A DNA stretch of 64,000 nucleotides from Iphione sp. A-MEVVRFRX5 (Eukaryota). Positions 16,101 to 37,100 of this stretch are shown one piece after another. How positions within the stretch are numbered: position 1 is the first letter of the stretch; each line of letters opens with the position of its first letter. The notes under the pieces are model-generated. The model searched no databases. It was not told the origin of the DNA and saw only the letters and a list, made by a program, of their open reading frames with translations. The position numbers were made by a program, and so were the translations under genes. Location of the stretch: the NCBI GenBank assembly GCA_976226885.1, contig OZ320315.1, forward strand, positions 56,544,001 to 56,608,000, given 5' to 3'.

Positions 16101-19100
16101 ACATTTTGGTTCTTTTTCAAATCGTCTGCATTTGGGATGTGTCTGCATCCCAGACATATCCTCCAGGGGACGTCACACTGTATGGTATAAATTGGAATAT
16201 TAACATACTTAGTACTGAAATTTCCTGGTATAGCTTATGCATGTCATAGGTCCACTGACAAACTCGCAAAAGAAAAGTACTGTATTTGCATTTATTGTTC
16301 TCTGTAAGGCTACAAACTATACTATCATTATTGTGGTCACATATAACATATGAAAATATTTACAGGTTTCTGCCAGTATACCAGGAATGAATGGGAAGCC
16401 AAGGCTTGTATTGTTTAGTACACTAAGCTGATATCTGCTTTAATGTCATGGGTACCTACATTACTTGACATGGACAATTTAATCTTTTGTACCTACTGTA
16501 CAATGTATTTTGTCTTTTTCTATTACTTTTTCCATTCTATTTCCTATTGTCTACCTTTCAGTTCAATTTAATCATAAAAAACATCCTCTGTATACAATTG
16601 AGATGATTAATAAAACTTTCAAATTCAAACAATATAAAGACACAAACTAACTATTGTTATTATAACATTATATGTCATATGAATCAATATCATGACCTAA
16701 ACCTAATCTACAAATAGTAGGTAAATACCTCACCAGCCTTGCCACTCTCTATTAAATTGCCATGTCATACTGACCTAAACTGAGATCATTCGCTACTAAC
16801 AAAATAACAGTATATTGTATACCTTGCTGCGCAGGGCAGGTCAGAGACACTAACATAAAACATTACAATAAACTTAGTCATATGTAGGTCGATAGCAACA
16901 CCATGCGGACCTCAAACGAGGTCACACAATACTGGTATACTAACAAAGTTACAGACATGGCTATAAATAACTAAGCAGTGACAGTCATCGCTGGATTATG
17001 GCCAATTCATCTATGCCCTTTGATTCTTGAACTATCCATAATGATTATTTCATGGTCAACAACTTCTCCTATGACATTAGTTGCTGTGTTTTCCAACTGC
17101 CTTTAGTAAATTTGTCGTCATATTGATTTCTTGCTAACCCTAGAGTTATGTCCACGTCAAATATTTTAAAAGGAAGGCTGTTCAAAATCTTAATGCTGTT
17201 ATATAATAGTGATTTCCAAAATTGTTCTGTATTGACTCTTGTGATAACTAATAGGTGCCTTAGATTCTTCTTTGCACTTGGCCTTCTACTTAATTTTTAT
17301 ATCTTTTCTTTTGGATACATTGGTTGATGATCCACAAAAAACTATATCCCAGAAAAGAACTATATTCTGACAATCTCTTCTATGATCTATCTTATTAATT
17401 TTGAAATCATGATAGACATGCTTCCCATCTATGTTAAGTCAGTGAGTAACTTGATACTCAACGACACTTAATTCTGCTATAAATTCGACTCTGAACTTAA
17501 TACACAGCTAAATCATATCCAATTATGGGCAACACATAAGTCTTAATTATCAGAACCATGATCCCCCTTGACAAGTAACCCTTTCTTGAATACCATAGTT
17601 TGGGGCATACTAAGTGAATTTGTATTCTCATAAATTCCTCGAGTCTTATGTTATCTAGGTTCACTCCTTAGTATTTTATACATTGGTAATATCCCCAATT
17701 TTTTAATCAGTTATGAAACAAGCCAGTTTCGTTGAATTACATCTCTTTGGCCGTCTATCAAACAGTAGTTCGTGTATCTTTCTTTTTTGTTTATTAGCAA
17801 TTATTATATTCCATGAACCATTCATTAAATCTCCGTTAGTGCCATCTGTATCAGTTTTTGAATCCCAGACAGAAGTTGCTGTTAGACAAATATTTCGGTT
17901 TGCCTGCATATATAAAGCACGATGTTAATATTAATTACTGACGGGATATCATCAATAAAGATGCTGAACAATGAAGGACCTAGGATTGATCCCTGAGACA
18001 CACCTCATAGTACTATAATAGCATCTATAATATAGCATCATTTAATAGTGACCTTACTCTTCTATTTGTCAAATAGCTTCTAAACCATTCAATATTGCAT
18101 AGTACTGCTTTCTTATTCATCTTATTCAGACGTATATTGTGATCTATACTATCAAAAGCCTATTTACAGTCGACATATACCACTGTGACTTTTCCATTCC
18201 GAGATGCATGAATATTTACTAGTTTGTAGACAGTCGACGATTTCACTAAGTCCCTGTCTGAAACCGTGTTTGAAAGATGTAATTAAGTTATTATTATTCA
18301 AGAAGCCGTTCACCTGATGATATGCTAGTTGTTCTAAAAGTTCTGTAGATAACACACGCACTAGACTGGCCTAAAATTGGAAGGTTACAGTCTAATCCCC
18401 CCTTAAATAGTGGTCTTGTGGTGCCGTTCTGGAGACTTTCTGGGAAACAGTTCTGAATGATACATTTTTCAAATGATATAATTGCTTGATTAGTATTCTT
18501 AATATATTTATTACCATTTAGTACTTATGGAGAACATACGTATAGTTTTATTTTTTTAGCCTTTTGACTTTCCTTAGTAACTGCTCTAAAGGTATGTATT
18601 TGAAATTGAAGGCTCCGCCCCCATGTATTGATTTCTAAATGAGTATCAATCAATACTTTATGCATTTTGGTGAGACATTTTACAATGCTCGTGAAGTAGG
18701 TATTTATATAATTAGGTAAATCTCCATCTGATATATATTGTACACCCTGAATGAAGTGACATAATAGGAGGTAATGTTTCTTGAAGTTTATTGCTCAAAT
18801 GCAAGAAGGTCAATGATGACAAAGCTCTGTACGGCTGCTTTTTATACATAAAATATGAATTTATCTGGAGCCCCAAACATTACATTTAACTCCATTCGAA
18901 GGCTCTGTCCAGAACTCCACCCAACTTACTCCGCTTACACTGTCCCCCACTAAATTTTGCTCAGATGCTGAGCCAGGACTTCCTCATCGCCTGCCAGCAG
19001 AGCATCACCGGTGTCCAACTGCTCACTCTGCCCAGAAGTCACATCTGAGGTGGGCTCCACCGTTGCTTAGTCATGACCCACTGGGGTGGCCCCTGCCTGG

Positions 19101-22100
19101 CCTTCTCCATTCGTGAGGCCTTCCATGATGGTGGCATCGCTCAGCTGGTCTTGGTCAATCTGCTCCACTAAAGTGGACTCTGCTAGGGTCTTGCTGGCAT
19201 CAGCCTCGGTGGAGGTGGTGCCAGGTGGGCCTTCGGCAGCTTGTTCTGCCGAGGTGGACCCCACTGGCACTTCACTGATGGCAGGATCAATTTGGGCGAC
19301 CTCTGTCTGAGCCCAGTTGGGCCCCTCAGTGGCGGACTCCACCCAGACTTCTACGTCACTCCCTTGTCCTCATGCCATGCTGATGAGGCTCTTGGCGGCC
19401 TCCTCAACGTCCTCTGGACTCATGGGGAGGTTGGCAGCAGCCCCACCCGACGAGTCTAGGACGGCATACCGTATCTGGCCCACTGTTTTCTTGGCTCGGG
19501 GGTGGTTGGTCGATCTTGGTGGCTTAAGTTTCAGTAGCCTCCTCCTCCTTGCTGGAGGTGAGGACAACCACTTCCTTCACCTCCTCATCCAGTCGTGCCC
19601 AGTCTAGGCCCAATTGTACATGAAGATCCCGGGCCTACTGGCAGGGAGGAGTAGGTGGAGCCCAGTGTTGTGGTGTGTGTCAAGGGCAGTACTCCTAATG
19701 TGGTCACCGCCCAGGCCATGGGCGACATGGTAGCAGTGAGCCCACAGCCAGCGGTGGCTTTCTTCTTTGCAGGGGTGGGAGTACTGGTCTCGCTGCCTGA
19801 GGAGATGGGTGACGTCACCAGCTGGTATCTGCCACATGCTGCCCACATCTTGTCCAAGTCCAGATTGCAGGGCTGGTTTCGAACATGGGAATGGGAGTAC
19901 CAGTGGTTGGAGATCTGTCCCTCCCCCTACTCCCTGCATCCCCCGTGATGAGGCCAGGCATGGGCCACCCCAGGAGTTCTGGCCTCAGATGGGGGCAGAA
20001 CTGCCTCTGTTCCTGGTGCTGGGTGCTTACATTGTCGAGCCTCACAGATGGCGGTGACCTGCTTGAGCTCTGGGGTAAGTCCAGTACTTGTGGATGCATG
20101 AGAAGAATCTAGTCCATGGAGCTTTGTGTTGATGGACCCGCTCCCTGCAGAACTGACACCAGACGGCCCAGCATGGGGGTCCTCTGGGGTCCCCTGGACA
20201 GTCAAATTCACAGCCTCTCTCTTTGCCCCTAGAGTACGTACCTGGGGGCCAACAGTCTGCATGGGGCCCCCATCTCTGCGGTGTCTTCATCGTCCTCGTC
20301 CTTGTCCTCCTCTGAGTACCCACCAGAGAGGGGTGGAGACAGCCGAACGCCTGTTGTCGACTGCTGCTGCTATGGTGTTGGGGCCGGCGATGCTCCTGCT
20401 TGGGTTGAGGAGGGGCAGGCTCCCCTCACGTCATTGCTCATTCCTTGGTGCTCTCCCACTCTTCTATCTGTGGTCGGCAATGTAATTCTTCCTCCTTCTT
20501 AGGGGAGTTCTTCCTTCAGGCCCATTTTCACATACACATACACCAGCATCACCTGCTGGCCCCACTCTAGGTAGTGCCTGCCCTTGTTGGTATGCTGTGC
20601 CTTCAAGTGCTGCCGGAAGTCATCCTTGCAGTGGAAAACAGGGCGTCAGCATTGGGGGGCAGGGCAGCAACAAGCGTAGGTCATCTGCCAGTGCTTGACC
20701 ATATGCTGGCACAAGTTGCCAGGCCTATCTGTGCTATAGCTGCACAGGTTGCAGCTGTGGCTGGTGTCACCAGGGTCGGTCATCTTCTCAGGGGTGACCC
20801 TATCCACAGTCCGGTCAGGAAACTGTCACTACAGGCTCCACCCGGAGTTCGGAATTCTGCCTCTTGAAGGCAAACTCCACCTAACCTGCTGATGGTCGAG
20901 CAGGCTCTGCTCTCTTCTTGGCTCTTCACCAGATATCTTGGCACTCTCTGCCTGCATCATGCTCTATGGCCGGGGAAATTCTCTCTTCATGGGAAGGGTC
21001 TGCCTATGAATCGACTGAACAGCGAGCTCCGCCACTTTGCACTCATATGCACCACTCCAAATCTCCACCAAGCACTGATTGGACAATGTTTCACATGCTC
21101 TCCTCTCATTGGCTACCGCAGGGTGGAGTGTGGTCAGTCCTCACATCAGAGCCTGCCTCTCCATCATTGCTGGGTGGAGTGAGGTACCTGCTCTGCCTGG
21201 AGTCCACTGGCCACCAGGCTCTGCCCTGCTTTTATTCCTTCGGAGGTCAGTGAGAGAGGGGGGTCATTGGCAGACAAACTGCCAAGTCTTGCACCATCTC
21301 CCCCAAAGACTGGATGCCAGGGCCTTGGTGGCTTCTTCTCCATAGCACTACCACAGTTTCTGGCAGATCCCATGGAACTTCAACAGCACCAGGCAAAACC
21401 AATCTTGTCGTTACAGCCATCTGACCTCAACCACAGGGGCTCTGCTCACTACTTGGCACCGGGGTCCCAGCATTCCTCACATCAGCCGATTTAATTCACA
21501 GAGTTCTTTGTCCAGCATCTCTGCCCACCCCCAGGGAATATGGGCCAGGGCAGGCGGATAGGTAGTGCTCCAGCTTGGAGCCATCAGGGCCAGTCTTCTC
21601 TCAGGAGGTGCAAGTGGCCATCTGTACCAGCATGGGGGTGATAGTGCTCTAGGCGAGTGAAATCCCACAGCATCCTGACGAAGGATGTTTAGCCGGCCAA
21701 TCACGTCTGGGGGGTCTTCAACAGCATCTTGGAAAGCAGGTTTTAACAAATCAGCTTGAATGATGTGCTGCTTGCTTCCCTTCTTTATGTGGTACACAAC
21801 TGCACTCAGCTTGGTCTTCACTACCCAGGGTCCTTGCCAGCGGCACTGAAGTTTGAAAGAGTGGCCCTTCTTCTTGATTGGAGAATAAAAACAAACGCGG
21901 TCGTCTTCATGGTAGTCTTGTTGCTGCACCTTCTAATTGTACCAATCTTTCCGATGCTCCTTGGCCTGCTGCAGGTTTTGTCACACCACTATATGCTCTG
22001 ACACTGGTAGCTTCCTGTTTGCCTGCACATAGTCATTCACTGCCACTTCCTCTTCCCAGGGAGATCCTACCATCAGTTCAACTGGCAGCATTGTTTCACG

Positions 22101-25100
22101 CCCTAGAGTCATCCAGTTTGGGGAATAACCAGTCATGCGGTGTGGTGTAGACCTGTACACACCCATCAGGAAGCAGAGCTGTTCGCCACAGTTAGATTGA
22201 TCTTCTTTAACCACTTTAACTAGCATACCTGTCAATGTATGATTAAAGCGTTCCACCACCCCATCACTTTGGGGGTGGTATGGCATCCTCCAGGTCTTCT
22301 GTATCTGCAACAGTTGGAGGAGCTCCTGCATTTGGGCAGCATCAAAGTTTCTCCCCTCATCTGAATGCAGGACCCTTGGGGGGGCCAAACTGACATGATT
22401 TCTCTCAGCAAGTGGTGAGCAGTTGACACAGCATCTACATCAGCAGTAGGGATGGTCTCTGTCCACTTCAGGAAATGGTCCGCAACTATGATAATGTAGC
22501 CGTTACCCCTTGGCATGACTGGGAAGGGGCCGCAAACATCTACTGCTACTAACTCCCAGGGCCCGGGCCATTCTGAGCTGCATGGGGACTTGGTGCTTGC
22601 AAGCGGGGTCTGGACATCGCTGGCACTCCAGGCACCCTTGATTCCATTGGCACACATCTCTGCTAAGCCCAGGCCAGAAGTAACACATCCTAATGGCTCC
22701 CTCAGTCTTCTCTGGTCCTAGGTGTTTTGCAAGGGCCCCCCCATGGACCTCCTTCCACACCACATGGCATAGGTCCAAGGGGACATAAGCTTGTTGTCAC
22801 ACGCCTCTGTCCTCCATGCTTCAGCGCTTAAACAGCAGCTGACGAGAGATGCACAGGTGGGGTCACTCGTTCTTCAGACAACACGCCACATCACACGAGC
22901 CCTTTCTCTCCCCCCTCAAGCCACCGGTGCAGCTCTCAAACCAGTTCATGTCATTCTTGGGCTTGCAGCAATCCCCCCTCATCTGACCTTGCCTCGATCT
23001 GTAAAGCTGCCACCCTGCTATCAGGTGCCTCATCCTCCTCTTTGGGTTCCCTGCCACACTAGTGGCACTTAGTCCATGAAAGGCTATCCATGTTGCTGTG
23101 TTGTCGTCCCAGGCAGTGTAAGATCTCGATGTAACAGTAAATCTCTTTGAGCCAGCAAGCCAGCTGGCCCTCAGGCTCCTGGAACTGGCAGAGCCAGAGG
23201 AGGGAACTGTAGTCGGTTTGGATCACTAGCTTCTTCCCTTCCATGTATGTGCGGAACTTCCGAAGTCCAAAAACTACTGCTAGCAGTTCTTTTTGGGTCA
23301 CGCAGTAGTCCTTCTCTGCTCACATAAGGCTCTGACTTGCATAGGCCAGTGCCTGCTCTCTCTCTCCTTGCTCCTGGGAAAGTACCACTCCAATCCCGGT
23401 GGTTGACGCATCAGTGTCCATGGTCAACTGGTAGTCGGGCTGGGGATACGCCAGGATGGGGGATGACATCGGCCAGTTCTTCAACTCAACGAAGGCCCCC
23501 TGGCAGTTTTTGTCCCAACGGTACTCTTCACCCTTCTCCAGCAGGCGATGCAGGGGGCCCGTAGTAGGAACACAGTCCAATGAAGCTGTGCAGCTCAGTG
23601 ACACAGTGTGGGGTAGACCACTCCTGGATGACTCTCACTTTTTCCAGATCTGGCTTCACACCCTAGGCTGACACGTGGTGTCCAAGGTATGCCACCTCCC
23701 ACTGAAAGATCTGGCACTTCTGTGGCTTGATCTTGAGTCCTGCTTGCCGTAACCAGATGTTTTTTAAACTTTAGAAGTGTTTATTTCTGGAACAATACAC
23801 AACTTGGTACATTTCGTCCAGAGGTGATAATAATGAGATGATAGTAACCATTGTAGTCAACAACATGAAAGCCAACCATTATACAGCCTTAAGTCCTAGA
23901 TCAGTATACAATGTATTAATACGAGTTTCATTTTCACAAATTTTGTGAAATAGAAAACAACTTAATAACAAGGACAACTTCAGTGGGACAAATGCCCAAG
24001 TAAACAACTGCTTTCAGCAATTAACACATAATATCTAATATCATCGCTCCTAGTTTCTTATAAACATAGTAACCTATTCGAATGTTACTATTCTAATTCA
24101 CTGTCTTGTACCTCTGCCAATACTGTTGGTTTTAATTATGTCATTCTACATTCCATCAAATCACAGATATAATCCAGCTTTCCTTAAAAGAAAAAAATAG
24201 TCGGTCAGTCATAATCACTCATTTCTTGCAAACAGTCTCATCAATATGCGAGCCTTGCGCCTCCTTACTTTTAGATAGCCAATAAAGGCCTTCAAGTCTA
24301 ACTTGGTTACATATCTATCAAGGGACATCCACAGTTTGCATGAGCAGTAATAACTAGACTGTTTAAATTTTGAAAAGTAGGGTTTAGCTGGTATGATTCT
24401 AAACTTGTTTCTTATCCGCTGGACTTCCTTCCCACTATTTGTATACTTATCATCTAAGGGTTCATTATGTACCTTACAGTTTGCAAATAAGCGCAGCAGA
24501 GTTATATCTCGTAGTTCAAACAACTCCGTTTTGACTTCAGTACGGGGAGGAACTTCAGTACTACATAGTGTATACAGTCTTCTTCGTAGAGTTATATAAC
24601 GTTCGAAGTAATTTGGTCTAAATTTTGTTAATACGAAGATCCCATAATCGATTTCCGGGAAGGCCATGGTCGTTACCAACCGTTGTAGTGTTCTATTATC
24701 TATGTATGGCTTAATATGTGTTAACATTTTTAATTTGTAGTAACCCTTCTTCAGTAGATCAGTGAGGTGCAGGTGCCAGTCTAGATACTTGTCAATTTGG
24801 ATTCCTAAATATTTAAAGACCGTAACTTCACTTATCACAGCGTCCCCAACTGTTATTGGACCTAAGGGTTTTTCAGGGCGATATGTGGGGCACATATATT
24901 TTGTTTTGCTCATGTTTATTCTAATCTTATTTTCTAAAGACCATCGAATTACCTCCTCTATTCCTCGTTTTAAATTAGCCATACTCGTGGGTCGGTCAGG
25001 ACCTTCTGAGATTAGCACTACATCGTCGGCATACATCATGTAGTCTACGGAGTTAATTGAGAGCAACAGGTCATTTATAAATATAAGAAATAATGTGGGC

Positions 25101-28100
25101 CCCAGGATGGATCCCTGGGGGACACCAGTCTGCACTTGTTGGAAGCTAGAGTATACATTGTTTATTTTTACTCGTTGTCTACGATTTGACAGATACGCTC
25201 GCATCCACGGGACAATTTTCCTTAGGCCTATTCCCGACATTTTCTTTAGCAAAATATTGTGATTTACCGAATCAAAGGCCTTGCTAAAATCAATAAAGCA
25301 AAGGCCAACATGTCTGCAAGCATTCAAGAGCTTATGTACCTTTTCTAGTAAACAGTAGACTGCCATCTCAGTACCCCACTCTCGTCTAAAACCAAATTGG
25401 GCATGACTTAGTCTTTTATTTGATTCGAGATACCGAGTTATCCTATTATTTATTATTCATTCTACCACTTTAATCACCACCGTTAGAAGACTAATTGGAC
25501 GATAGTTTTTTATGTCAGACCTGTTTCCACCTTTGTAAATTGGAACAATAGTTGCGTCTTTCCACTGTTGGGGGAGCGAGGCTGTTGTTAAGCTCAGATT
25601 TGCTAGCTCGAGTAGTTCATCAGTTAAATCTAATAATATCTCTTTACAAATTTTCATTGGGATATCCAAAAAGTTTGAGGCCTTGTTTAAAGGTAAATTA
25701 GAGACAGCGGTTATCCATTCATCAATAGTAATTAGTGGTACTCCCATGTGCAAATAGGAAGGGACAGAATAAGAGATCACTTGAGTAACGTCCGGGAGGT
25801 CCGATATGCTCTCTTTTACTACATTGATGAAGTAGATGTTTAGCTTTTCTACAGACAGCGTCAGTAATTCTGGATTACCATGTTCATCTAAGAACTGCAG
25901 AATCAAGTTTTTCTCTTTTAAACCCAACTCAGATCTCAAGTGACTCCAGAAACGCTTTGGATTATTCTTATCTAAGTTAATTTTCTTTGTAATAAATTCC
26001 TTCCTGCTTTGTCTCAGTTCCCTATGGACTCTATATTTAGCTAGTTTATATATAAGATGGTCGTACAAGTCGCCCGTCCTGTGGTATTTCTTCAATGCTT
26101 TGTTCCTGTTCCTTATACAATCTCGAATATAACTAGTACACCATAGCGGGGAATTTGTCCTTTGTGCCCATTGCTTTACTGGTGCTAATGCATCAACTGT
26201 TTTCGCCAAGGCATGTTCAATGTAGTCCCAGTATTCCTGTGCTGTCTGAATATAAAATAGCCTATCCCAGTCATCAAATGTCATTTTCCTCCTAAAGTCT
26301 GTGATAGTCACCCCCTTCCAGATACGTCCAGTGATGTATTCTTTCGTAACTTTTTCAGTCATCCACTCTACACAAATTAAATTGTGGTCACTCAGTGTAT
26401 AATCCTCAACGTTGCATTTTAGCAAATTTCTAGGTAAATCAGTGATCAGAAGATCAATTATCGTACGCAATCTGGGGGTAACACGAGTGTATTTATCTAT
26501 TAACTGCGATAGTGAATTCTCATATATCAATTCAGTGAGCATATGCTTCGATGGGGATGGTTTAGCCCAGTCTACATTGAAATCCCCTACCATGAGTATC
26601 AAGTTCTTACTATTAAGTTCTTTTATTTTCGTCAACTGCCTGTTTAGATTTTCCAACGCCTCTCTCAAATTACCTGAAGGTGGACGATAAACACAGCATA
26701 TATAGATGCTTGGGGTAGTACAGTTTCTTACTCTAAGCCACAACAATTCTAGATCTGCAGTCAAACTAGGACCTATGTCAACTGGAGTTACTATGGTTGC
26801 CAGAGTATCCCTTACATATATTAAAAGCCCCCCCCCTTTCTTTGAGGTTCTATCCTGTCTATACATACAATAGCCCGGTTTCTCTAGCAGACCTGCCGGG
26901 TACGATTGCGTTAACCATGTCTCACCGATACAAAGACAATCAGGTGATTTCGTCTTTAACATAAACGATATCTCGTCTAGTTTCGAAACAATGGAGCGTA
27001 TATTTATATATATTATCTTAAACATAATCCTTCTGTGTTATAGCCCAGGCTGAAGATGTCATATAAAGTACTTTGGCAGCAAAAACATCTAGTGATCGGC
27101 ATAGAGCATAAACATAAGTAATGAGTATAGATGAAATTACACGCAGTGCAGTGGTAGCTCCACCACATGTACATAGCATGGTAGACAACCCTCCCCCCCA
27201 GTCCTGTCAGGCTATTAAGTGTAATACTCCTCAATCTTGTTATAAATTTTGCAACCTTATATAATAATTGGGGGCTTACTATCAAATCGTAATGGTGCCA
27301 ACAGCCCCGCGATCTGTAATTGTAAGCTCACAGTCTTATCATACCAAGTTATAACGGCAAACATCTTATAAGTATCTTAACCCCTTCCTGACCGAGTAAT
27401 TGGGGCGATGTCAGTATGGTAACTGAGGTGTACATATAAAATGCTCCATATCAATGGAACTAATTGACATAGAATAAAGTGTGAGACATCATTGAAAAGC
27501 TGAGAAAATGTACTTTTTAGATATGTCTTTGTTGTATATATTACTTTATATAGCTGGAAGGTGTCACGTGGTATGTCACGTGGTTTTATAATTTTTCCTT
27601 ATAAATAGAAGCCGTACTGCATAGAAAAGTGAGAAAAAGGGCAAGAAATATTTGTTTTAGACATAATATTGCATCGTACGAATTGTAGAGGAAGTCATAA
27701 GGATTAATTTGATATATTAAGCATGTTGTTATTATAAAAATTAAGAAAATTATCTATTACCAAAGTTGGCACCATGTGGCGCCCAAAATACCGCTTCATG
27801 CGGGAAACAGATGATGGCGCTGTTGTCGAGACGAATCGTCTAGGACGTAATGACTTAAATGTACATTAATGTTGATTGCACTGCTATTGCGGTATATTAA
27901 CATTAATATTGGTGTGAAAGAGTTACAGGGCATCATGATTTAGTAAATAAATGTGAAAAAAAACATTTAAAAATCTACGATGAACATGTAAATGATGACG
28001 TCATAGTAACTTGTGACGTTCTGATCAAAAAACACTCGACGAGTCTGTTGAACTAAAGCATTTATTCCAAAAGATCAGGAATGGATGAACTAAGGAATGC

Positions 28101-31100
28101 CTTTGCAATAAGAGGGTGAGTATCTCTAGAGTATTTCTACATAATTGCAACTAATATAAAGTGATTATTAATATTTAATCATCACATTCTGTATGAACAC
28201 GTCTACCACGTGTTGGTCGATCAGTAGTGACTGACAAGCGATCAGTATATGTGATACCTCTGGAGGGTTGTACCCATGTATGAGGAAGTACATCTGGAAC
28301 TTGTGTACATAATGAAGAGTAATGCTGTATTATTACAAATCATTAGATATATTGGAATTGCAGTTTGTTTTTTTTTCATCTAGGTTGCAGATGCCCCTTG
28401 CGTTGCAATATCTCATAGAAGATGGTCCCACCAAGAAAACAGTGTACAGGCGTTTATGGGTAGCTGTGAAGGTAAGGCCAATTGACTGGGAATAAACATG
28501 ATGGGAATTATTTTGAAAGATGACAATGCCTATAGTAAAATACCTACTTCTTATTTTTACAGTTCGGTGGTCAACTTGGTGGTGGGATGACCACTTTCAA
28601 TTTCCCACCTGAGCTACGTGCTGCCATCCGTGCTTGTTATGCTGATGGACAAGGAGGGGCATATGACCATCAGTACAATGGCAATCCACATGTATGCATT
28701 ATAACTGAGTCTCGAATGTCACAGTGGAATTTCATGATCATCTGAACAGTTCTGTTGTTGGAAATGTAGATGTTTGCCTGCATATCATAAAATGTGGTGC
28801 TGACTGTGTGCTTCCTTCCAGGTGTATCATGTGTCCTACACTGAGCTTGCCAACATACCCTACCCTCCTAGGAAGAAGACCAAGTGAGAACACAAGGCAA
28901 GTAACTCCTGCTCATTTATGGCGACAGCTTTCCAAGATCAGTTTCCTGTGGACATCAAAGGCTGCTGAGTGCCATAATTTGACACAATTTCTCTCTGAAT
29001 TCAAGCAAAGGTGCATGTTGCACTTCGGGTGAAGGCATGCCCAGTTGCCCTTGTACTGCTGGCCATGGACGATGTAGCACAATTTGCAATTCCGTCGAGC
29101 AGGGACATACTCTGGTGTGTCCGCAGTGATACTCAGCGTATTCATGTGTTCTTGAGGCAAGTGTGGAGCCACTGGCTGGCATGGGAACAGGTACTGGCTC
29201 ATCATCAGAAATTCCTGCAAGCTGTTTTGCCAGCTCAGCTCTGAACCACAGCTGTGAGTAATATGCTGGTCTTTGTAGAGCCGGATCATCAGGATGAAGT
29301 TTCCTCCATTTTGTGAATAGAATGAAGGCATTTACAATGGCTACATCAATCATATGGTAGAATAAGGTTTTCCACCAATGAACTGATTTGAGCAGCACAT
29401 TGTAAGGCTGGATCAGCTGATCTGATAGATCAACAGCCCCCATTTGCAGATTGTATTCAACGATGGCCGCAGGCTTCTTTACATACACAACACGGTTACG
29501 TCCAGCTGGGTCTTTCACATTCCTCTTTGCCATACTGAAGAGATGCCCTTGGTGAATGGTTGAGCATACGGTGACACTTCGTGAGTCCATCCATTGTTGG
29601 AATAGAATAGGACCATCCCTCAGATATCGCATGTCACCACGAGATGATTTTTTTGCCCAGGTCTTATCCTTCAGCACCTGTAGAAGAAGAAGTGTGGATG
29701 TACTTAGTAAATGCAGACAAGAATGAATGATATATTTCAGATAGCAATGACCAATATGTTTCTTGAGAGCAAATATCACTATGCATTGTGGTATCAGGTG
29801 AGGACTTTTCTCTAGGAAATTTTACCTGTGGCATTCCTTTCCTGTTTGTGATGACAGTCCCACAAGAAGTGATTCCATTAGAGAGCAGATGGGTCAGCAG
29901 AGCAATTGATGTGTAAAAGTTGTCGAACCACAGTTGGTAACCCTGATGCATAAATGATGGGATCAGATTCGCCACTACATCATATGCAAGACCATTGCTG
30001 CTGGGATTTTCTCTCTTGCCAGTGTAGACGCTGTGGTAAAAAACATAACTGATCTTAATTAGTAGTGCAGTAATGCATAGATTGGGTAGGGAGAGTACAA
30101 CGTATCACAATGCACTAGGGTTAATTGTCATTTTGTCACTGTATGTCACTGTTTTCTATAGGAACTTACTTGAATTGCAGAGTGTATCCAGTGAGGGATT
30201 CGCAAGCACACCACAATTTGAAACCAAACCGTACTGGTTTCTGTGGCATATACTGGCGAATCCCTGATCTGCCCTTGCTCTTCACCATTCGCTCATCCAT
30301 GGCAATATTCCTTCCAGGTTGATACACTTGAGGGCACACCTTGTTGAAGTGCTCCAGGAGAGGTCTAACCTTGCAGAGCTTATCATCATGATCTTCTTCA
30401 GTTGGATGGGATACGTGCATCATTGCAAGTATTGCCTTGAACCTACAAGAACAACCAAGGAGAAGCAAGGCATCACTCAGTATTCCTGTACCTTACATGA
30501 AATAAAATGAAACTGTTCCTGACATAAATCTCTTCATTCCTCTTACTGAATATACAGACATATACAGATGTACTGCTCTTACCTGTTCCTAGACATATAC
30601 CGCCTAGCCCATGATCCTGAGAAGGGCGGAATTGTACACCAGTACAACGCCATTTCTGGGAACCGATTCAAACCCATCAGGATGACCAGTCCCAAGAAGC
30701 AAGACATTTCTTGAAGTGTAATGTTTTCCCAGCTTCCATCAGAAAACTTGGCATAGCTCTGCTTATCGAGGATGTGTATCCATGCATATGTGTTGGAGTT
30801 GTCCACCAGCAACTGCATTGAAATAAAACAACAATTACACACATTTGCTACCAAAGGTCGCATACATACAAATATGATGTAGTCCAGTGGTCAGTGCACA
30901 TGGCTTTTGATGGCAGGACTTGGAGTCAAACAAAAAGACAAAAAACAAAAAGAATTATACATAAACACATATTATTTCATGATTTTATTACCTGCATGAC
31001 ATCCATGGTGAAAAAGAGCTTTAAAAAATCTATAGCTCTTGTAAATGCTCCAGCTTCAGATCTTGTACCACTGTCACAAATGTGCAAGCCTACTGGCCTT

Positions 31101-34100
31101 CTTGGCTTGAATGCTGGATTTGAGATCCTTGCATCCCTATCATCATAGGATTTCAGCCTGTCGTATTCAAAAAGATGTATTTATTATAAGTACCATTATT
31201 ACCTCGGATATATGATGTAAGTGATGTAGTCCAGTGGTCAGCGCACATGACTTTTGATGGAAGGACATGGGTTCGAATCCCTTGAGGGGTAAACTTTTTT
31301 TTTTCCATAATGTTCCATTTACAGGAGTACTTTACCAAATTAACACCAAAACATTATCCTTCCAAGCAATAGACACACTTATCACTAAATTTAGGTAATA
31401 CTTCACTCCCAATAATATTATTGATAATAAAGCATACGATACTTACGTCTTTGACGTTGTCTGCCTCCTTGGCTCTTCCACTGGAGGGAACACATCTGGA
31501 TCTTCTTCATCCTGTGCCTCATCTGGTCTCACCAATAGCTCATCCAGGAGGTCTTCTTCCTCAGGTGATAACCCTTCTTGGTTACACTCATCCACATATT
31601 GCACCCCAAACCCTCTGGCTATGAGGCCTTTTGCTTTTTCAGCTGCAGTTCGTTTAGGACGACTCATGGTTACCCACTCCAGTGTTTGAACACTGACTGG
31701 AGGTGTTACATCAGGTCACGTGACTATTTATTCATTAATGGAATCAATTAAAAATCACCAAAACACAAAAAAGGGTTAATGTATTTGTTTCCTTTTATTT
31801 CTGGCATTTCCAAGCAAATACAATGACGAATAATCATTATCCACTCATGTCAGGTGATCATCCTCCTCCAGTGCCTAAACTTGGTCTGCCCACTGATTCA
31901 GTGGTCACGTGACTCAGCTAATTTGCATAAAACTAAAAAAAAACAACAAAAAAGTGTTTCGGTATATGTTTACTATTATTCCTGAAAATTTGGTACAAAT
32001 CGGATAATTATTAATGGTAGAAATTAACCAAATCCTTATCATCCAGATCTGTACGATAAGCCTATGGTCGGTCAGGAAGGGGTTAAAGCCACTACCAAAT
32101 ACACTTTTAAGAGTATTGTAATCTCGATGTTGGGACTCTCCAACCTAATATGCTACAAATAACTAGATCACCGACATAAATGTGATAGTAACAGATCAAA
32201 CAATAACAAATCAAATCAAATCACCATGGTATTGTGCAGTAATGGTTTGTCCCGTACAACAGTTAGTGGTAATAGCATATCAGACATAATGAATCAAAAC
32301 AAATCACCATGGTATACCACTCTTAGATTAATTACTTGAGAGCAAACATTATACATTTTTACCCTCCCACAGCAGTTGATGCATAATACAACTGAGACAA
32401 TAATGAGTTCAATTATCAATAACGTTATCAAATAGTAAAACGCCATAGTGGTGCCAATCAGCCCCACTTGGTCTACCAGGTTACGTACCAATCGAGTATT
32501 TTCCTTTTAACTCAAATGTTTCTCAGTGAGATAGCGTCAAAAACCAAACTAGTCAGCTTACTGGAAACAACAATTAATTACCGAGTCCGCCAGTGTGGTG
32601 CCAACAGCCCCACCTGGTGTTGTCAAGTAAATTATATTCGTTGACCAGGCAAAATGGCAAATTAACTAGCTCCTTGTTTTCTGTAAGGTAAATTTAATAC
32701 AAATGACAATTGAATACTGAGTCCGCCAAGTAGTGCCAACAGCCCCACTTGGCTTCTTCAAGTAAGCTGAAATTATTTGTCAATCATAAAGGCAAAAATG
32801 ACCTCACCTTCTCTTTAGTAGGGAATCAAATCATACTTTTACCATAGGCCGTACAGTTGGCGATAAAGCCGTATCAATGCGTCTATCAGATACCTAACCA
32901 AATAGGGCTTCCAGCAGTCCTCCAAGTGGCATCCATCCCCAAGTCTCGACAGTCGGTTTCTCCAAACGCCCTCCTTCCTCGAATGTAGTACCATGTGACA
33001 CCATGGAGTCGGGACTCCGTGGGCCATGTTAATCGTTACGATTCGCTGGTTGACCATATGTGTGGCAGTATTTATAACTGACTGGACACGTTGACTGTCT
33101 CTGGAGGTAGCGTAGTATCCATTTAGGACATAATTCATTCGGCCGTAATCCCTCGAGAATATAGTTGCCAGCATGATAGTACTCGACGGGTAACGGCGCT
33201 GTATCCTAAATCAAGCGTACCGGTACATCACTTCCAGTTCATTTGCAGCTTCGATTGGTGAGAAGTATCTTGGCATGACATACCGTATAGATACTCCATC
33301 GTCCCTGGTCATACGCCGACGGACTGTTAGGTTGTTCGTCCCCACGAGGATTATTATGACCGAAGGTATTGGCGTCAGGTCTTCCGACAGAGCACTGTCA
33401 ACCAAACTGTTTATTGTGGCGCCTGGATATACACGCATGTTTACATGCCAGCTGGTCCTATCAAATATTTCTTGCAGACCCCTACCGTGACTCGAAGTGA
33501 GGATATAGATAGACGCCATTTCGCCGGTCTTTTACTTTAGTCGAGTTTTGTTTGCAAAGAGTTATTGCTTTTCCGCCACTGTTTTCGTAAACGGGCTTCC
33601 GACCATGCAGTCACTCGTGGTTGTTTTCGGGCTCGGCACTTCCGGCGTGTCCGTGGTGCGGGTGCATTCGGAAACAGTGGCAGATTCTGCCGAGTTATCC
33701 GGTTGCAACATCGGTGGAGACAAAGCAGCTAGTTCGTTCCTGATCTGTTCTAGCATCTTACCAAGATGGTTCTTCCCAGTGAATGATCCTTCCAGTAGCT
33801 CTTTTGAACCTAGGTTTTGTCCAGCACCCCAGAATGTAGAGCGGCTTGCTTCAATCAATATGTCATTTCCAGTTGATTGCAGATATATAGCAAGCCAACT
33901 TCCCGGGGCAAATTTGCAGCGAAGGGTTGTCAGCATAGCTTCTGTCTTGCCCGTTTCCCATGCTGCCGACGGGGGGATTCTGGCTTTCAGTGATAACAGA
34001 TCATCAATATTCTTTACCTTTAGGATTTCTTCTGCAAGCTTTGGGTTGTTTGCCGCTTTTGCCTTGAGCCATTGGTATCTCTGTTCCGAAGAATCAAAGG

Positions 34101-37100
34101 TATGACCGTCTGTTTCCATCTTCACTGGATACAAATTTGACAGTGGTGACACTGAGAACGCAAAGAACAACCTTCCAGCATCTCTGATATGAGATGATTC
34201 GTAGAGTTTCAATGATGGCGGGGCAGTGGATATTGTGTCAGTGGTGTATGCCTTTCCATCAATCACTATTGATTCTCCACTTAATTTAATAGAGGTTGTC
34301 GGTGAGTGTCTTTTCACATATCGCTTTACCCACCCTAATTCAGATTTTTTACGGCGAGTACTTGGGGCTTCATCCTGGTTGATCCAGATATTGGACCCTT
34401 TTAGAAGCCGTCTGTTTCTCAACAATGCTTCTACTGTGCTCTGCCGAACAAATTTGATTAAGATAGGTCCCAGAGGCATCGGCCCAGCTCTTTTTATCCT
34501 AAAGGCAGTATCAATGTCGTCTTCCTTTATCGTTACACCAATCTTCGAAGCAATTTCAATCACCTGCTGTGATATATCTGTTCTGGCTTGTAGTCCTGAG
34601 CCATCTATTAGCAATGTTTTCCGTCGATTCCATTTATCCATATCCGCTCGCAGATTAGCCACACAACTGGAGCCCGATATGTCATTCAAACGTTTCATCT
34701 CCGCCCGCAAGCTATTATTTTCATTGGTTAACCTTGCAATATCAGATTTCAGAGCATTGATCTCTTTCTTCTTACCCTCCACCTTGGTGTTGATATCTTT
34801 CACCTTGTTCAGTGAGGAGTCCATTTTAGATTCAAATACATCTAGCCTAGCATTCAATGATGATTTTATCCCCCGCACCTCCTTCAGTAGTAGTTGAAAA
34901 TTTTCCGGCCCAATCTCTCCAGTGAGGATCATCTCTTCCTCAGTTGTCGAACTATTTGCCTTTTTACGTATAGAATCCCTTTTCGCCGATTGGCCCGGCA
35001 CCTCAGTGTTATTCAAATATTCTAGGATGCTTGATTGATTCAACTTGGGAGGGATTCCCTCAGACCGATCCATGTTTGGACTTACAGGTGGGTTTACTAA
35101 TGCACCTGCCATAGCAGCCGTCAGAATCGTGTGCCCACCTCAATATCGCTCACAAGCAGATTAAAAAAAACAAATATATCGGCGTTCTTCACAACAGATA
35201 AGTTCAAGAACGATATCAAAATGTTCTTATTATACTGACTTTAGTGAAGGCCTTGTCTTTCGTGTCCAGTTCACATGGGTAATATCCTAGCCTGACATTC
35301 TCAGGGGAGCCGGGTTCGCGGTACCTCTCTCTACCGCACCATGCTTGTTTATGATGTTCTTCCATCCTCTTCATCCTCTGACTTCTCATCCCCACTCTCA
35401 CTGGGCTTGTGGTTATTCACCTCCTCCTTAATCTCTGAGGGAGTTGGGGCCTCATCCAGAATGTGTGGCTGATGTTCTTCTCCGGCCCCACTGAGCCATG
35501 GGGGATCCCCATCAACCATCCCTAACTTGACTGGTGTCATTAGGTCCACTTCCTGAAGCTCACCTGCCTTGTCACCTGGCAGCTCCACCCAGAGCTTGCC
35601 GAGCTCTGCCCACTTGGCAGGCTCACCATGCTCCACTGCATGTTCTGCCGGATGCTCCACTGAGTCAAACTCCACTGATGCTCCGGTGGTGGAGATCCCA
35701 CTGCTGCCACCAATTGTACACCCCGAACGAAGTGACATACTAGGAGGTAATGTTTCCTGAAGTTCATTGCTTGAATGCAAGAAGGTGAATGATGATGAAG
35801 CTCTGCAAGGCTGCTTTTTATACATAAATGTGAATCCGCCCAGAGCCCCAAACATTACATTAAACTCCGCCTGAAGGCTCTGCCCAGAATACGGCCCAAC
35901 TTACTCTACTTACACTATATTTTATCATTATCACTTAAATACATTCTTTTCTCTCCTGTGTTTTTCCTCCTTGCTAATATTGTATATTCTCTGCCTTCCC
36001 AAAATCTCATAGGTGCTCTTCCATTGTTTTTAGAGTTCCTACATGTGTTCCTTCTTTTGGGTCACAGCTATCGAAACTTAAGCTCAGCCAATTTGTATAC
36101 CAGACAGTCCTTAGGGCTCTGAGAGTATTTCATTCTTCGATATGCCTCACTTTTTATGGTGATAGCATGTCTTAACCTTTTGTGTGCTTTTAAAGGGCAT
36201 TGCATAGGTTATACCTGTACTTTGACCATTGGGACATATTCTATCTGCAATGCATTGTCTCACTTTTAAGAGGAATTCTGTGATGTAATTACAACTATTA
36301 GACTAATAGCTACCTGTCAAATTGGTTTCACCTGCTCAACACTTAATAATTTTACATTAGGACGTTTACCACATCTTGTAACATTAAGCTCATCATATCG
36401 AGATTAAATGATTAGCTTTAACTTTCCCATGGATTAGATTACGATCACTAAGTTTTATTTCTATACTAGCCGCTTTGTACATACGGACATCTGAAAAAGT
36501 CAAGTCAATTGTGGATGCACCATTTTTACGCTTTCGTGTCGGTTCCTGCACTTGTTGACGTGGCCCAAACATTAATTTAGTTTCTTCTAAGTTGTAACAA
36601 CTCTTTGACACGACATTACGGTATCATTCGCTACTCATATTGTTGCCAATTAAATCACATGCTTGCTTCACGTTCCCATTTACGAACCTTTTACCTAATG
36701 AATTCTAAATGAATCGAATATTCTGTGAACAAACCATACTTTACGGCTAAGTTTCCATGTACACCCTATCCAAGTAAGGTATGTAAGTGTACTGTAAATG
36801 TGCTTTTTTTTGGAATACATGTATATACACAAATGTTTCCATATCAGCATGGGGCATGCAATGTGCAGTATGTCCGCATGTAGCATGTTTAAAAAATGGT
36901 ACATGTCCCATTCTGCCATGAAAGTTAGGTATGTTGGAACATGTTTTTTGGAAAGAATTGTTGTTGTAAAATGAGAACATGGCGAATACATGCTTCACGG
37001 TGTGTACACAGTCATTATCAGATTAAGAAAGGATTAGCAGAAATGCCCAAACCAATATGGCTACATGGAGATATGAGCACATGGATACCCAGCCTAACCT

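What the first reader, a model, noticed from the sequence alone, without database searches (positions are those of the whole stretch)
33562..35112. LINE ORF1 fused to a NADAR (YbiA-like) N-glycosidase domain
Seen: an intact 516-aa ORF1 with coiled coil and RRM-like region ends in a complete NADAR-like domain (residues ~314-461, 34173-33730) with the SN, SE..Q..K, W, KF, L..T...L.E, WG.G and GKN.LG..L..R motifs. Known: NADAR proteins include E. coli YbiA (riboflavin-intermediate N-glycosidase) and the antitoxins that remove ADP-ribose from guanine in DNA (DarT1-NADAR). The usual LINE ORF1 accessory domains are PHD, CCHC knuckles and esterase; I know of no described NADAR-ORF1 family. Inference: the retrotransposon may carry an enzyme in its RNP that removes or binds host ADP-ribosylation of its RNA or cDNA, an anti-defence function parallel to viral macrodomains.
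Basis: partly seen in the sequence, partly recalled or inferred. Interest (0 to 1): 0.9.

Follow-up and report, generated by a model that had tools for sequence, protein, structure and literature searches.

The report
LINE ORF1 protein carrying NADAR domain
A jumping gene (LINE retrotransposon) in this animal genome has an RNA-packaging protein that ends in a well-preserved NADAR enzyme domain, of the type that strips ADP-ribose from DNA and RNA bases. The fusion is real, old, abundant and kept by selection, but a 2025 paper noted it briefly and its function is untested.

Summary
Window 33562-35112 (-) is an intact 516-aa ORF made of a long coiled coil, an RRM plus CTD like human L1 ORF1p, and a full NADAR domain (Pfam E 1e-19; fold Z 19.8 to P. 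nicotianae NADAR with ADP-ribose). The main catalytic residues are kept.

It is ORF1 of a three-ORF LINE spanning about 35345-23760: ORF1-NADAR, a small SGNH esterase ORF, a spacer with repeated hairpins, then an endonuclease-RT ORF2. This copy is dead. The esterase ORF and ORF2 each carry one in-frame stop, and a 4.7-kb piggyBac sits in the spacer.

The genome holds thousands of NADAR-ORF1 copies in many lineages (30-100% identity), some with all three ORFs open. The NADAR part is under strong purifying selection (dN/dS about 0.1). Over 1,000 public protein clusters share the layout, several next to EN-RT genes.

PMC12477816 (2025) mentions YbiA-type NADAR in ORF1 of oyster Tx1 LINEs, and this scan has flagged the fusion many times elsewhere in this genome.

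The function is inferred, not shown. Most likely the ORF1p trimer carries an eraser of base-linked ADP-ribose into the LINE RNP. No host writer enzyme was found.

The parts
35113..35345 (-). 5' UTR of the LINE (about 233 nt); homology to the 85%-identical copy on C17 starts here
   Evidence: blastn of the window against L002 starts at 35345. A target-site duplication was not resolved.
33562..35112 (-). ORF1, 516 aa, intact: disordered N-terminus, coiled coil, RRM, CTD-like part, NADAR, fast-evolving tail
34621..34908 (-). Coiled coil (residues 69-164), predicted to form a parallel in-register homotrimer
   Evidence: AF2 gives a single helix over 69-164. Three copies of residues 66-310 score ipSAE 0.66 against a best control of 0.01, with heptad-spaced contacts over 67-162. 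The pass may reflect the model's memory of the solved L1 ORF1p trimer.
34195..34620 (-). RRM (about residues 165-249) and CTD-like region (about 250-306), L1 ORF1p type
   Evidence: VIA: human L1 ORF1p RRM 2W7A Z 8.6 (model 162-247); trimer 2YKQ Z 9.9 (model 147-322); many RRMs at Z 7-8.5. Foldseek E 1.5e-6 to 2YKQ.
33712..34194 (-). NADAR domain (residues 307-467), YbiA-family type, with E343, K350, W385, K400, E421 and W428
32839..33519 (-). Second ORF, a small SGNH/GDSL-type esterase-like protein (about 226 aa), broken here by one in-frame stop at 33211-33213
   Evidence: Translation. Weak Pfam Lipase_GDSL_2 matches (E 0.086 here, 0.0016 for L036). The AF2 model of the intact L036 homologue (pLDDT 69) hits only SGNH hydrolases (PAF-AH, TesA, sialate esterase) at E about 3e-4, TM about 0.5.
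32087..32838 (-). Spacer, part 1, with conserved hairpins (invariant cores at 32733-32746 and 32598-32611; a one-mismatch copy near 32470)
27377..32086 (.). piggyBac-type DNA transposon inserted into the LINE spacer: TTAA duplications at 27377-27380 and 32083-32086, and perfect 15-nt terminal inverted repeats. It is not part of the LINE.
   Evidence: Inverted repeat I1; the colinear uninterrupted copy L002/L031; transposase-like ORFs at 28955-30468.
27026..27376 (-). Spacer, part 2, with the fourth hairpin (core 27295-27308)
24215..27025 (-). ORF2, 936 codons: APE-type endonuclease plus reverse transcriptase (YADD box), broken by one in-frame stop at 25457-25459
   Evidence: Translation. Pfam Exo_endo_phos_2 1.5e-13. 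RVT_1 3e-39 in the intact homologue L036.
23760..24214 (-). 3' UTR ending in AATAAA and a short A run. The flank beyond it is Ty3/Gypsy pol sequence.
   Evidence: Sequence. Homology to five other copies ends at 23760-23775.

Best explanation
This is ORF1 of a non-LTR retrotransposon with three ORFs.

Shown:
- The protein has the L1 ORF1p body plan (coiled coil, RRM, CTD) followed by a complete YbiA-family NADAR domain.
- It is followed by a separate SGNH-esterase ORF, a 0.5-1.2 kb spacer with hairpins, and an endonuclease/RT ORF2.
- The family has thousands of copies and many old lineages in this genome.
- The NADAR part evolves under strong purifying selection, with its catalytic Glu/Lys/Glu intact.

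Inferred:
- ORF1p trimerises through the coiled coil and coats the LINE RNA in cis, so each RNP carries many NADAR active sites.
- These sites work as N-glycosidases that cut ADP-ribose off guanine (N2) or cytosine bases of the LINE RNA, or of the single-stranded cDNA and target DNA exposed during target-primed reverse transcription.
- This would cancel a host or microbial nucleic-acid ADP-ribosyltransferase that otherwise blocks translation or reverse transcription. It is a counter-defence like viral macrodomains and phage NADARs.

The window copy itself is dead. It has one in-frame stop in each of the other two ORFs and a piggyBac in the spacer, and its open ORF1 needs no special explanation.
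For: - NADAR by profile, sequence and fold.
- Residues that match the mechanistically important E43, K50 and E125 and the ADP-ribose-stacking W89 and W133 of P. nicotianae NADAR (PMC11543638) are E343, K350, E421, W385 and W428.
- Across 72 ORF1 proteins at 19-90% identity, these are kept in 72, 70 (K or R), 68, 69 and 68 sequences. In 45 own-genome copies they are kept in 40-44.
- NADAR dN/dS is 0.06-0.12. dS is saturated between lineages while NADAR dN is only 0.17-0.33, lower than for the whole protein. The C-terminal tail runs at about 0.56.
- Genome counts: 4271 first-look ORF1 candidates, with 63 of 84 scored matches free of stops. 4416 NADAR candidates, with 150 of 150 scored over the Pfam cut-off, mostly in 450-700-aa open frames.
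- Copies with all three ORFs open exist: L036, L038, L042.
- Outside this genome, 1266 50%-identity clusters match at E<=1e-10, and the top 150 almost all span RRM plus NADAR. In L045 and L046 the gene sits next to EN-RT ORF2s, and in L043 next to an esterase ORF.
- A homotrimer is predicted (0.66 against control 0.01).
- From the literature: NADARs are the only hydrolases known to reverse G-ADPr on DNA and RNA, and some reverse C-ADPr, including a sponge enzyme and YbiA types (PMC11543638, PMC11833690, PMC12945103). Eukaryotic guanine-DNA ARTs of the CARP-1 type occur in bivalves, cnidarians, sponges and other bilaterians. Invertebrate nidoviruses have independently gained NADAR domains.
Against: - No enzymatic or expression data exist, and no RNA run was listed for this stretch.
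- No host writer was found. Scabin-like (PF22596) and Enterotoxin_a (PF01375) profiles found nothing in this genome. That search has no positive control and reads exon by exon, so it is inconclusive.
- Two ADP-ribose-contacting residues of 8BAU are not kept. The R79 equivalent is Leu here and variable across the family. The D130 equivalent is Ser or Ala in this sublineage, though Asp in most of the family. The substrate could therefore differ.
- YbiA-type NADARs also cleave small-molecule N-glycosides (riboflavin intermediates).
- The host has its own stand-alone NADAR (L047), so an extra eraser is not obviously needed.
Confidence: 0.45

Rival explanations
1. The NADAR domain is catalytically active but acts on something other than base-ADP-ribosylated nucleic acid. 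This is the 'RNA processing' idea voiced for viral NADARs and for the oyster and Ectocarpus elements.
For: The catalytic residues are conserved, but the R79 and D130 equivalents that hold ADP-ribose in 8BAU are not. E. coli YbiA and plant NADARs cleave riboflavin-pathway N-glycosides (PMC11543638). PMC12477816 proposes processing of the RNA intermediate. No host base-ART was detected.
Against: Every NADAR class tested so far removes G-ADPr from DNA and RNA, YbiA included. NADARs were inactive on phosphate-end ADP-ribosylated RNA. Fusing the domain to an RNA-coating protein points to a nucleic-acid-borne substrate.
Confidence: 0.27
2. The domain is kept as a non-catalytic module. It might be an ADP-ribose or nucleic-acid binder that steers the RNP, for example to ADP-ribosylated chromatin or DNA breaks, or a structural extension of the ORF1p C-terminal domain.
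For: It sits directly after the CTD-like region, where L1 ORF1p binds nucleic acid. Some lineages in this genome replace E421 (L052 and L054 have Leu, L042 has Ala). Earlier notes of this scan report copies with lost catalytic residues.
Against: E343 is invariant in 72 of 72 sequences. K350 (K or R) is kept in 70 and E421 in 68 at only about 25% overall identity. That pattern is typical of a working active site rather than a scaffold.
Confidence: 0.15
3. The intact ORF1 in the window is a domesticated host gene that survives because the host uses it, not because it is part of a transposon.
For: ORF1 is open while the other two ORFs of the same copy each carry a stop and the element is split by a piggyBac.
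Against: With 2 stops in 3495 nt of the neighbouring ORFs, about 0.9 would be expected in 1551 nt, so an open ORF1 has roughly a 40% chance under neutral decay (my arithmetic). The nearest relatives are ordinary LINE copies with the same 5' UTR and downstream ORFs. No RNA evidence was found.
Confidence: 0.03

Closest known systems
Tx1-type LINE families of Crassostrea gigas in Repbase, whose ORF1 proteins carry YbiA-family NADAR domains (noted in PMC12477816, 2025)
   Same: A LINE ORF1 protein with a YbiA-family NADAR domain, in an invertebrate host. The role is unknown, and an RNA-linked role has been proposed.
   Different: I could not compare sequences because Repbase is not on hand. Here ORF2 is about 935 aa and gave no detectable phmmer match to L1-type ORF2 in the PDB, so Tx1 membership is unproven. 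The separate esterase cistron, the hairpin spacer, the selection analysis, the copy numbers and the structure model are not in that paper.
Human/mammalian L1 ORF1p (coiled-coil trimer, RRM, CTD; PDB 2YKP, 2YKQ, 2W7A)
   Same: A long N-terminal coiled coil predicted to trimerise, then an RRM, then a CTD-like region. Fold matches are Z about 9-11 over residues 118-322.
   Different: There is no Pfam Transposase_22 sequence match. A 160-residue enzyme domain and a disordered tail follow the CTD. The partner ORF2 is short and not L1-like.
Stand-alone NADAR hydrolases: P. nicotianae NADAR (8BAU), E. coli YbiA (2B3W), the metazoan host NADARs
   Same: The same fold (Z 19.8 and 17.0). The same Glu/Lys/Glu and Trp residues, and the YbiA-family Glu rather than the Asp of DarT1-linked antitoxins.
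   Different: Only 25-28% identical. It is fused to an RNA-binding protein. The R79 and D130 equivalents are changed. This genome's own stand-alone NADAR (L047) is 25% identical to the LINE domain, so this is not a recent capture.
Esterase-bearing ORF1 proteins of CR1/L2-group LINEs (type IV ORF1; named from my own knowledge of Kapitonov 2009 and Schneider 2013, not checked here)
   Same: An SGNH esterase encoded upstream of an EN-RT ORF2 in a LINE.
   Different: Here the esterase is its own small ORF, placed after a complete L1-type ORF1p. In one foreign relative (L045) it lies after ORF2.
Viral ADP-ribose erasers: macrodomains of RNA viruses, phage NADARs against DarTG1, NADAR domains in invertebrate nidoviruses
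   Same: A selfish genetic element carries an ADP-ribosyl hydrolase domain in its replication or packaging proteins.
   Different: Those cases are viruses. Phage NADAR has a shown target (DarT1), and none is known here.

Membership tests
NADAR superfamily (PF08719), YbiA family | Profile match above the curated cut-off over the whole domain | tested here: met
   PF08719 71.9 bits against 35.1, profile positions 11-162 of 163. TIGR02464 80.1 bits against 73.7.
NADAR superfamily (PF08719), YbiA family | YbiA-like alpha-helical core fold | tested here: met
   AF2 model against 8BAU: Z 19.8, rmsd 2.1 A, 158 residues. Against 2B3W: Z 17.0. Foldseek E 7e-9 and 5e-7.
NADAR superfamily (PF08719), YbiA family | Conserved catalytic Glu (E43), phosphate-binding Lys (K50) and the YbiA-family Glu (E125) of P. 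nicotianae NADAR | tested here: met
   E343, K350 and E421 by the HMMER alignment to 8BAU and the residue roles in PMC11543638. Kept in 72, 70 and 68 of 72 relatives.
NADAR superfamily (PF08719), YbiA family | Full set of ADP-ribose contacts (R79, W89, R93, D130, W133) | tested here: inconclusive
   W385 and W428 are kept and R93 becomes K389. The R79 equivalent is L375 and the D130 equivalent is S425.
NADAR superfamily (PF08719), YbiA family | N-glycosidase or ADP-ribosyl-base hydrolase activity | not testable with these tools
   Needs an enzyme assay.
DarT1-associated NADAR antitoxins (BC4488 family) | Asp instead of the YbiA-family Glu, and a gene next to a DarT1 toxin | tested here: not met
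   Glu is present at position 421. The neighbours are an esterase ORF and ORF2, with no ART.
L1-type (type II) ORF1p | Trimeric coiled coil followed by an RRM and a CTD | tested here: met
   Fold matches to 2YKP, 2YKQ and 2W7A. Predicted trimer 0.66 against control 0.01 (may be from memory of the solved trimer).
L1-type (type II) ORF1p | Sequence membership in Pfam Transposase_22 | tested here: not met
   No hit at E<=0.1. Only feature-level resemblance of 0.78-0.79 in the Atlas.
Non-LTR retrotransposon (LINE) | APE endonuclease plus reverse transcriptase ORF2 downstream of ORF1 on the same strand, in many dispersed copies | tested here: met
Non-LTR retrotransposon (LINE) | Target-site duplication and a defined 3' tail | tested here: inconclusive
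   The 3' end has AATAAA plus a 6-7 nt A run at 23760. No convincing duplication was found by eye.
Tx1 clade of LINEs | RT phylogeny places the element with Tx1/L1 | not tested
   No reference RT set was on hand. phmmer of ORF2 against the PDB found R2 and group II RTs but no L1 ORF2p. This is only a weak hint against Tx1.
SGNH/GDSL hydrolase (second ORF) | SGNH fold with block I Ser, block III Asn and block V His | tested here: inconclusive
   All top fold hits are SGNH enzymes, but the model is mediocre (pLDDT 69, E about 3e-4). The motifs T-S/D-S-H-G, G-T-N-N/D-L and an invariant His are present. Pfam matches are below the cut-off.

The most novel reading that the evidence does not exclude
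[quoted passage not shown] These LINEs, like invertebrate nidoviruses, carry NADAR erasers in their RNPs as a counter-defence. The companion SGNH esterase and the hairpin-rich spacer may belong to the same adaptation.
Probability: 0.25. Interest if true: 0.9.

Novelty: new member of a known kind. Interest (0 to 1): 0.6.

Why it matters
Known LINE ORF1 proteins are chaperones with zinc knuckles, PHD fingers or esterases. An ADP-ribosyl-base hydrolase kept by selection in thousands of copies would suggest that the host, or its microbes, marks retroelement RNA or cDNA with ADP-ribose. It would extend the writer/eraser arms race known from phages (DarT against NADAR) and RNA viruses (PARPs against macrodomains) to eukaryotic transposons. 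It would also give animal NADARs, whose physiological role is stated to be unknown (PMC11125620), a testable context. The experiment is simple, because assays for G/C-ADPr oligonucleotides already exist.

Tried and rejected
- Expression: the look-up of sequencing runs listed no RNA run for 32839-35345, so read laying could not be used.
- Host writer enzymes: Pfam Scabin-like and Enterotoxin_a profiles found nothing in the genome. The controls also rang nowhere, so this is uninformative.
- LINE clade: names from the search for homologous proteins, the Atlas and the PDB gave no clade label. Tx1 versus the CR1/L2 group is left open.
- Host organism: cluster look-ups and encoding contigs gave only unnamed Logan/ENA records. 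The host-type NADAR is 60-65% identical to those of molluscs, annelids, echinoderms, hemichordates and a sponge, which does not fix the phylum. The top Branchiostoma hit scored high only because it has two NADAR domains.
- Recent capture from the host NADAR gene: rejected, at 25% identity.
- Stop-codon read-through joining ORF1 and the esterase: rejected. Two in-frame stops lie between them here, and the two ORFs are in different frames in L032, L038 and L041.
- Rfam: no family matches the spacer.
- NADAR tree: the LINE domains can form one clade (constrained tree not rejected, p-AU 0.64). The outgroup sampling is too narrow to name a donor.


Full report
**What is there**

The window holds an intact 516-aa ORF at 33562-35112 on the minus strand. 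Residues 322-461 match Pfam NADAR (PF08719, E 9.9e-20, 71.9 bits against a cut-off of 35.1, nearly the whole profile) and NCBIfam TIGR02464 (E 2e-22). By sequence alone it finds the two solved NADARs, P. nicotianae NADAR 8BAU and E. coli YbiA 2B3W.

An AlphaFold2 model built on 72 relatives has mean pLDDT 84, above 90 over most of residues 80-470. Its structural matches are:
- Residues 307-467 superpose on 8BAU at Z 19.8 (rmsd 2.1 A, 158 residues) and residues 302-473 on YbiA at Z 17.0.
- Residues 118/147-322 match the human LINE-1 ORF1p trimer (Z about 10).
- Residues 162-247 match its RRM (Z 8.6), alongside dozens of canonical RRMs.

Residues 69-164 form one long helix. Three copies of residues 66-310 are predicted to form a parallel, in-register trimer. 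The score is 0.66 against a best control of 0.01. In calibration this mark was reached by 21 of 30 solved homo-oligomers and 0 of 23 monomers. That calibration used two copies, and the pass may reflect memory of the solved L1 ORF1p trimer.

**The element around it**

Comparison with other genomic copies shows that the ORF is the first gene of a LINE running from about 35345 to 23760 on the minus strand. Its parts, in order:
- ORF1 is followed after 42 nt by a small ORF (33519-32839).
- Intact homologues of that ORF have SGNH-type motifs. A moderate-quality model of one (pLDDT 69) hits only SGNH hydrolases.
- Next comes a spacer, then ORF2 (27025-24215) with an APE endonuclease and a reverse transcriptase.
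- A 455-nt 3' UTR ends in AATAAA and a short A run.

In the window the spacer is split by a 4.7-kb piggyBac. This has perfect 15-nt terminal inverted repeats and TTAA duplications at 27377-27380 and 32083-32086. That is why ORF2 looks unlinked.

The esterase ORF and ORF2 each carry one in-frame stop (33211-33213 and 25457-25459), so this copy is dead. Given two stops in 3.5 kb of neighbouring coding sequence, an open 1.55-kb ORF1 is unremarkable, with roughly a 40% chance under neutral decay. Copies with all three ORFs open exist elsewhere in the genome (L036, L038, L042). The same ORF1, esterase, ORF2 order also holds in lineages only 30-36% identical in ORF1 (L041, L042).

**How common and how old**

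A six-frame search of the 1.18-Gb assembly gave 4271 first-look candidates for ORF1. The 84 that were scored range from 100% down to 30% identity, and 63 have no internal stop. The Pfam NADAR profile gave 4416 candidates. All 150 scored lie over the cut-off, mostly in open frames of 450-700 aa.

One outlier (C22:27636416-27636865, 176 bits) is a stand-alone NADAR of 212 aa. It is 60-65% identical to the NADAR genes of molluscs, annelids, echinoderms and a sponge, but only 25% identical to the LINE domain. It is the host's own gene and not a recent donor.

Outside this genome, an exhaustive search of 1.8 billion cluster representatives found 1266 proteins at E<=1e-10. The best 150 almost all align across both RRM and NADAR. 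Where contigs are long enough, these genes sit next to EN-RT ORF2s (L045, L046) and esterase ORFs (L043, and L045 where it lies after ORF2). Atlas clusters of this type are eukaryotic, with Annelida the commonest phylum where one is recorded. A NADAR-domain tree does not reject a single origin of the LINE-borne domains (p-AU 0.64), but the outgroups are too few to name a source.

**Is the enzyme kept?**

I mapped residues with the HMMER alignment to 8BAU and the residue roles given in PMC11543638.

| P. nicotianae NADAR | Window ORF1 | Kept across 72 ORF1 proteins (19-90% identity) |
|---|---|---|
| E43 | E343 | 72 |
| K50 | K350 | 70 (K or R) |
| W89 | W385 | 69 |
| E125 | E421 | 68 |
| W133 | W428 | 68 |

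In 45 distinct copies from this genome the same residues are kept in 40-44. Glu at position 421 places the domain in the YbiA family, not among the DarT1-linked antitoxins, which use Asp.

Two ADP-ribose contacts are not kept. The R79 equivalent is Leu here and variable in the family. The D130 equivalent is Ser or Ala in this sublineage, though Asp in most others.

Between lineages, synonymous sites are saturated, while NADAR dN is only 0.17-0.33, lower than for the whole protein. Where dS can be measured, NADAR dN/dS is 0.06-0.12, like the RRM and coiled coil. The C-terminal tail runs at about 0.56. Selection within the transposon lineage therefore maintains the domain and its active site.

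**Most likely mechanism**

Shown:
- An RNA-coating, probably trimeric ORF1p carries a conserved NADAR active site.

Established elsewhere:
- Every NADAR class tested removes ADP-ribose from guanine in DNA and RNA, and some remove it from cytosine. They do not act on phosphate-linked ADP-ribose, and no macrodomain or ARH does the base reaction (PMC11543638, PMC11125620, PMC11833690, PMC12945103).
- Guanine-DNA ADP-ribosyltransferases of the CARP-1 type occur in bivalves, cnidarians, sponges and other bilaterians.
- Invertebrate nidoviruses have independently acquired NADAR domains.

Inferred:
- ORF1p delivers the eraser in cis to the LINE RNA and to the single-stranded DNA of target-primed reverse transcription. 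This protects them from base ADP-ribosylation.

I give this about 45%. The main rivals are a different substrate (27%) and a non-catalytic binding role (15%). I found no writer enzyme in this genome, though that search was uninformative, and no expression data.

**Comparison with what is known, and novelty**

Full-text searches for NADAR, YbiA or DUF1768 together with retrotransposon terms found one relevant paper. PMC12477816 (2025) reports YbiA-family NADAR in Pol of an Ectocarpus Gypsy lineage. [quoted passage not shown] The fusion is therefore catalogued and has been noted in print, if only in two sentences.

This scan has also flagged it repeatedly on other DNA of the same genome: 102 notes hold the words, and eight were shown to me. 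My results agree with those that call it real, old and widespread. Some of those notes report copies that lost a catalytic residue. In my sample that applies to 3 of 43 copies for E421, and to the non-catalytic D130 position in this sublineage.

To my knowledge the following are not in print:
- the three-cistron design;
- the L1 ORF1p-like fold of the carrier protein;
- the selection and residue analysis;
- the copy numbers;
- the spacer hairpins.

I file it as a new member of a barely described known kind. Whether the element belongs to the Tx1 clade could not be tested.

**Side observation**

The spacer between the esterase ORF and ORF2 holds 2-4 copies of a hairpin. Its apical part, GGGGCUGUUGGCAC(C), is invariant. 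Its lower stem covaries: one pair is AU in 12 instances, UA in 11, GC in 6 and CG in 2 out of 33. It has no Rfam match. The 15-mer occurs 61 times in the genome against 1 for the reversed control, always in clusters beside ORF1 loci of this sublineage. It may be an ORF2 translation element or an ORF1p binding site.

Noticed in passing
window 32733-32746, 32598-32611, about 32470 and 27295-27308 (minus strand); also L002-L025, L032, L038: There are 2-4 copies per element of a hairpin in the esterase-ORF2 spacer. The apical sequence GGGGCUGUUGGCAC(C) is invariant and the lower stem covaries (AU/UA/GC/CG at one pair in 31 of 33 instances). It has no Rfam match. The 15-mer has 61 exact genome matches against 1 for the reversed control, all clustered next to this LINE sublineage. 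It may be an ORF2 initiation element or an ORF1p binding site.
   Followed up: partly
window 27377-32086: A piggyBac-type DNA transposon (4.7 kb, TTAA duplications, perfect 15-nt terminal inverted repeats CCCCTTCCTGACCGA) is inserted in the LINE spacer. Its transposase reading frame is in pieces (28955-30468). Another finding of this scan (s1-349335) concerns a second gene inside it.
   Followed up: partly
G000:C22:27636416-27636865 (L047:1357-1995, minus): A single-exon, stand-alone host NADAR gene (212 aa, PF08719 176 bits) is 60-65% identical to the NADARs of molluscs, annelids, echinoderms and Amphimedon, and only 25% to the LINE domain. Some database relatives are named 'irg-1-like' (infection response gene).
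   Followed up: partly
window about 18000-23759 (minus strand): GC-rich Ty3/Gypsy pol remnants (RT end, RNase H, integrase, many stops) directly flank the LINE 3' end. The LINE seems to have landed in the RT-coding part. The sequence upstream of the LINE 5' end (35346-35855, an acidic 168-aa ORF) does not continue that RT, so the locus has been rearranged further.
   Followed up: no
L045 (ENA ERZ21818088), L043/L044 (Logan ERR14368249), L046 (ENA ERZ25767047): Foreign relatives vary the layout. In L045 the GDSL esterase ORF lies after ORF2. L043 has two tandem ORF1-NADAR plus esterase units. L046 has a 677-aa ORF1-NADAR and ORF2 with no esterase.
   Followed up: partly
P0081 (1075 aa) and P0091 (2914 aa, NCBI, 12-kb contig): These proteins have 5 and 3 tandem NADAR domains and no other Pfam domain. 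P0091's short contig suggests a virus-like or transcript origin.
   Followed up: no
Atlas cluster, rank 100: A cluster of EN-RT LINE ORF2 proteins in which 78% of members carry a PARP-type zinc finger (PF00645). This is another link between LINEs and the DNA-nick/ADP-ribose machinery.
   Followed up: no
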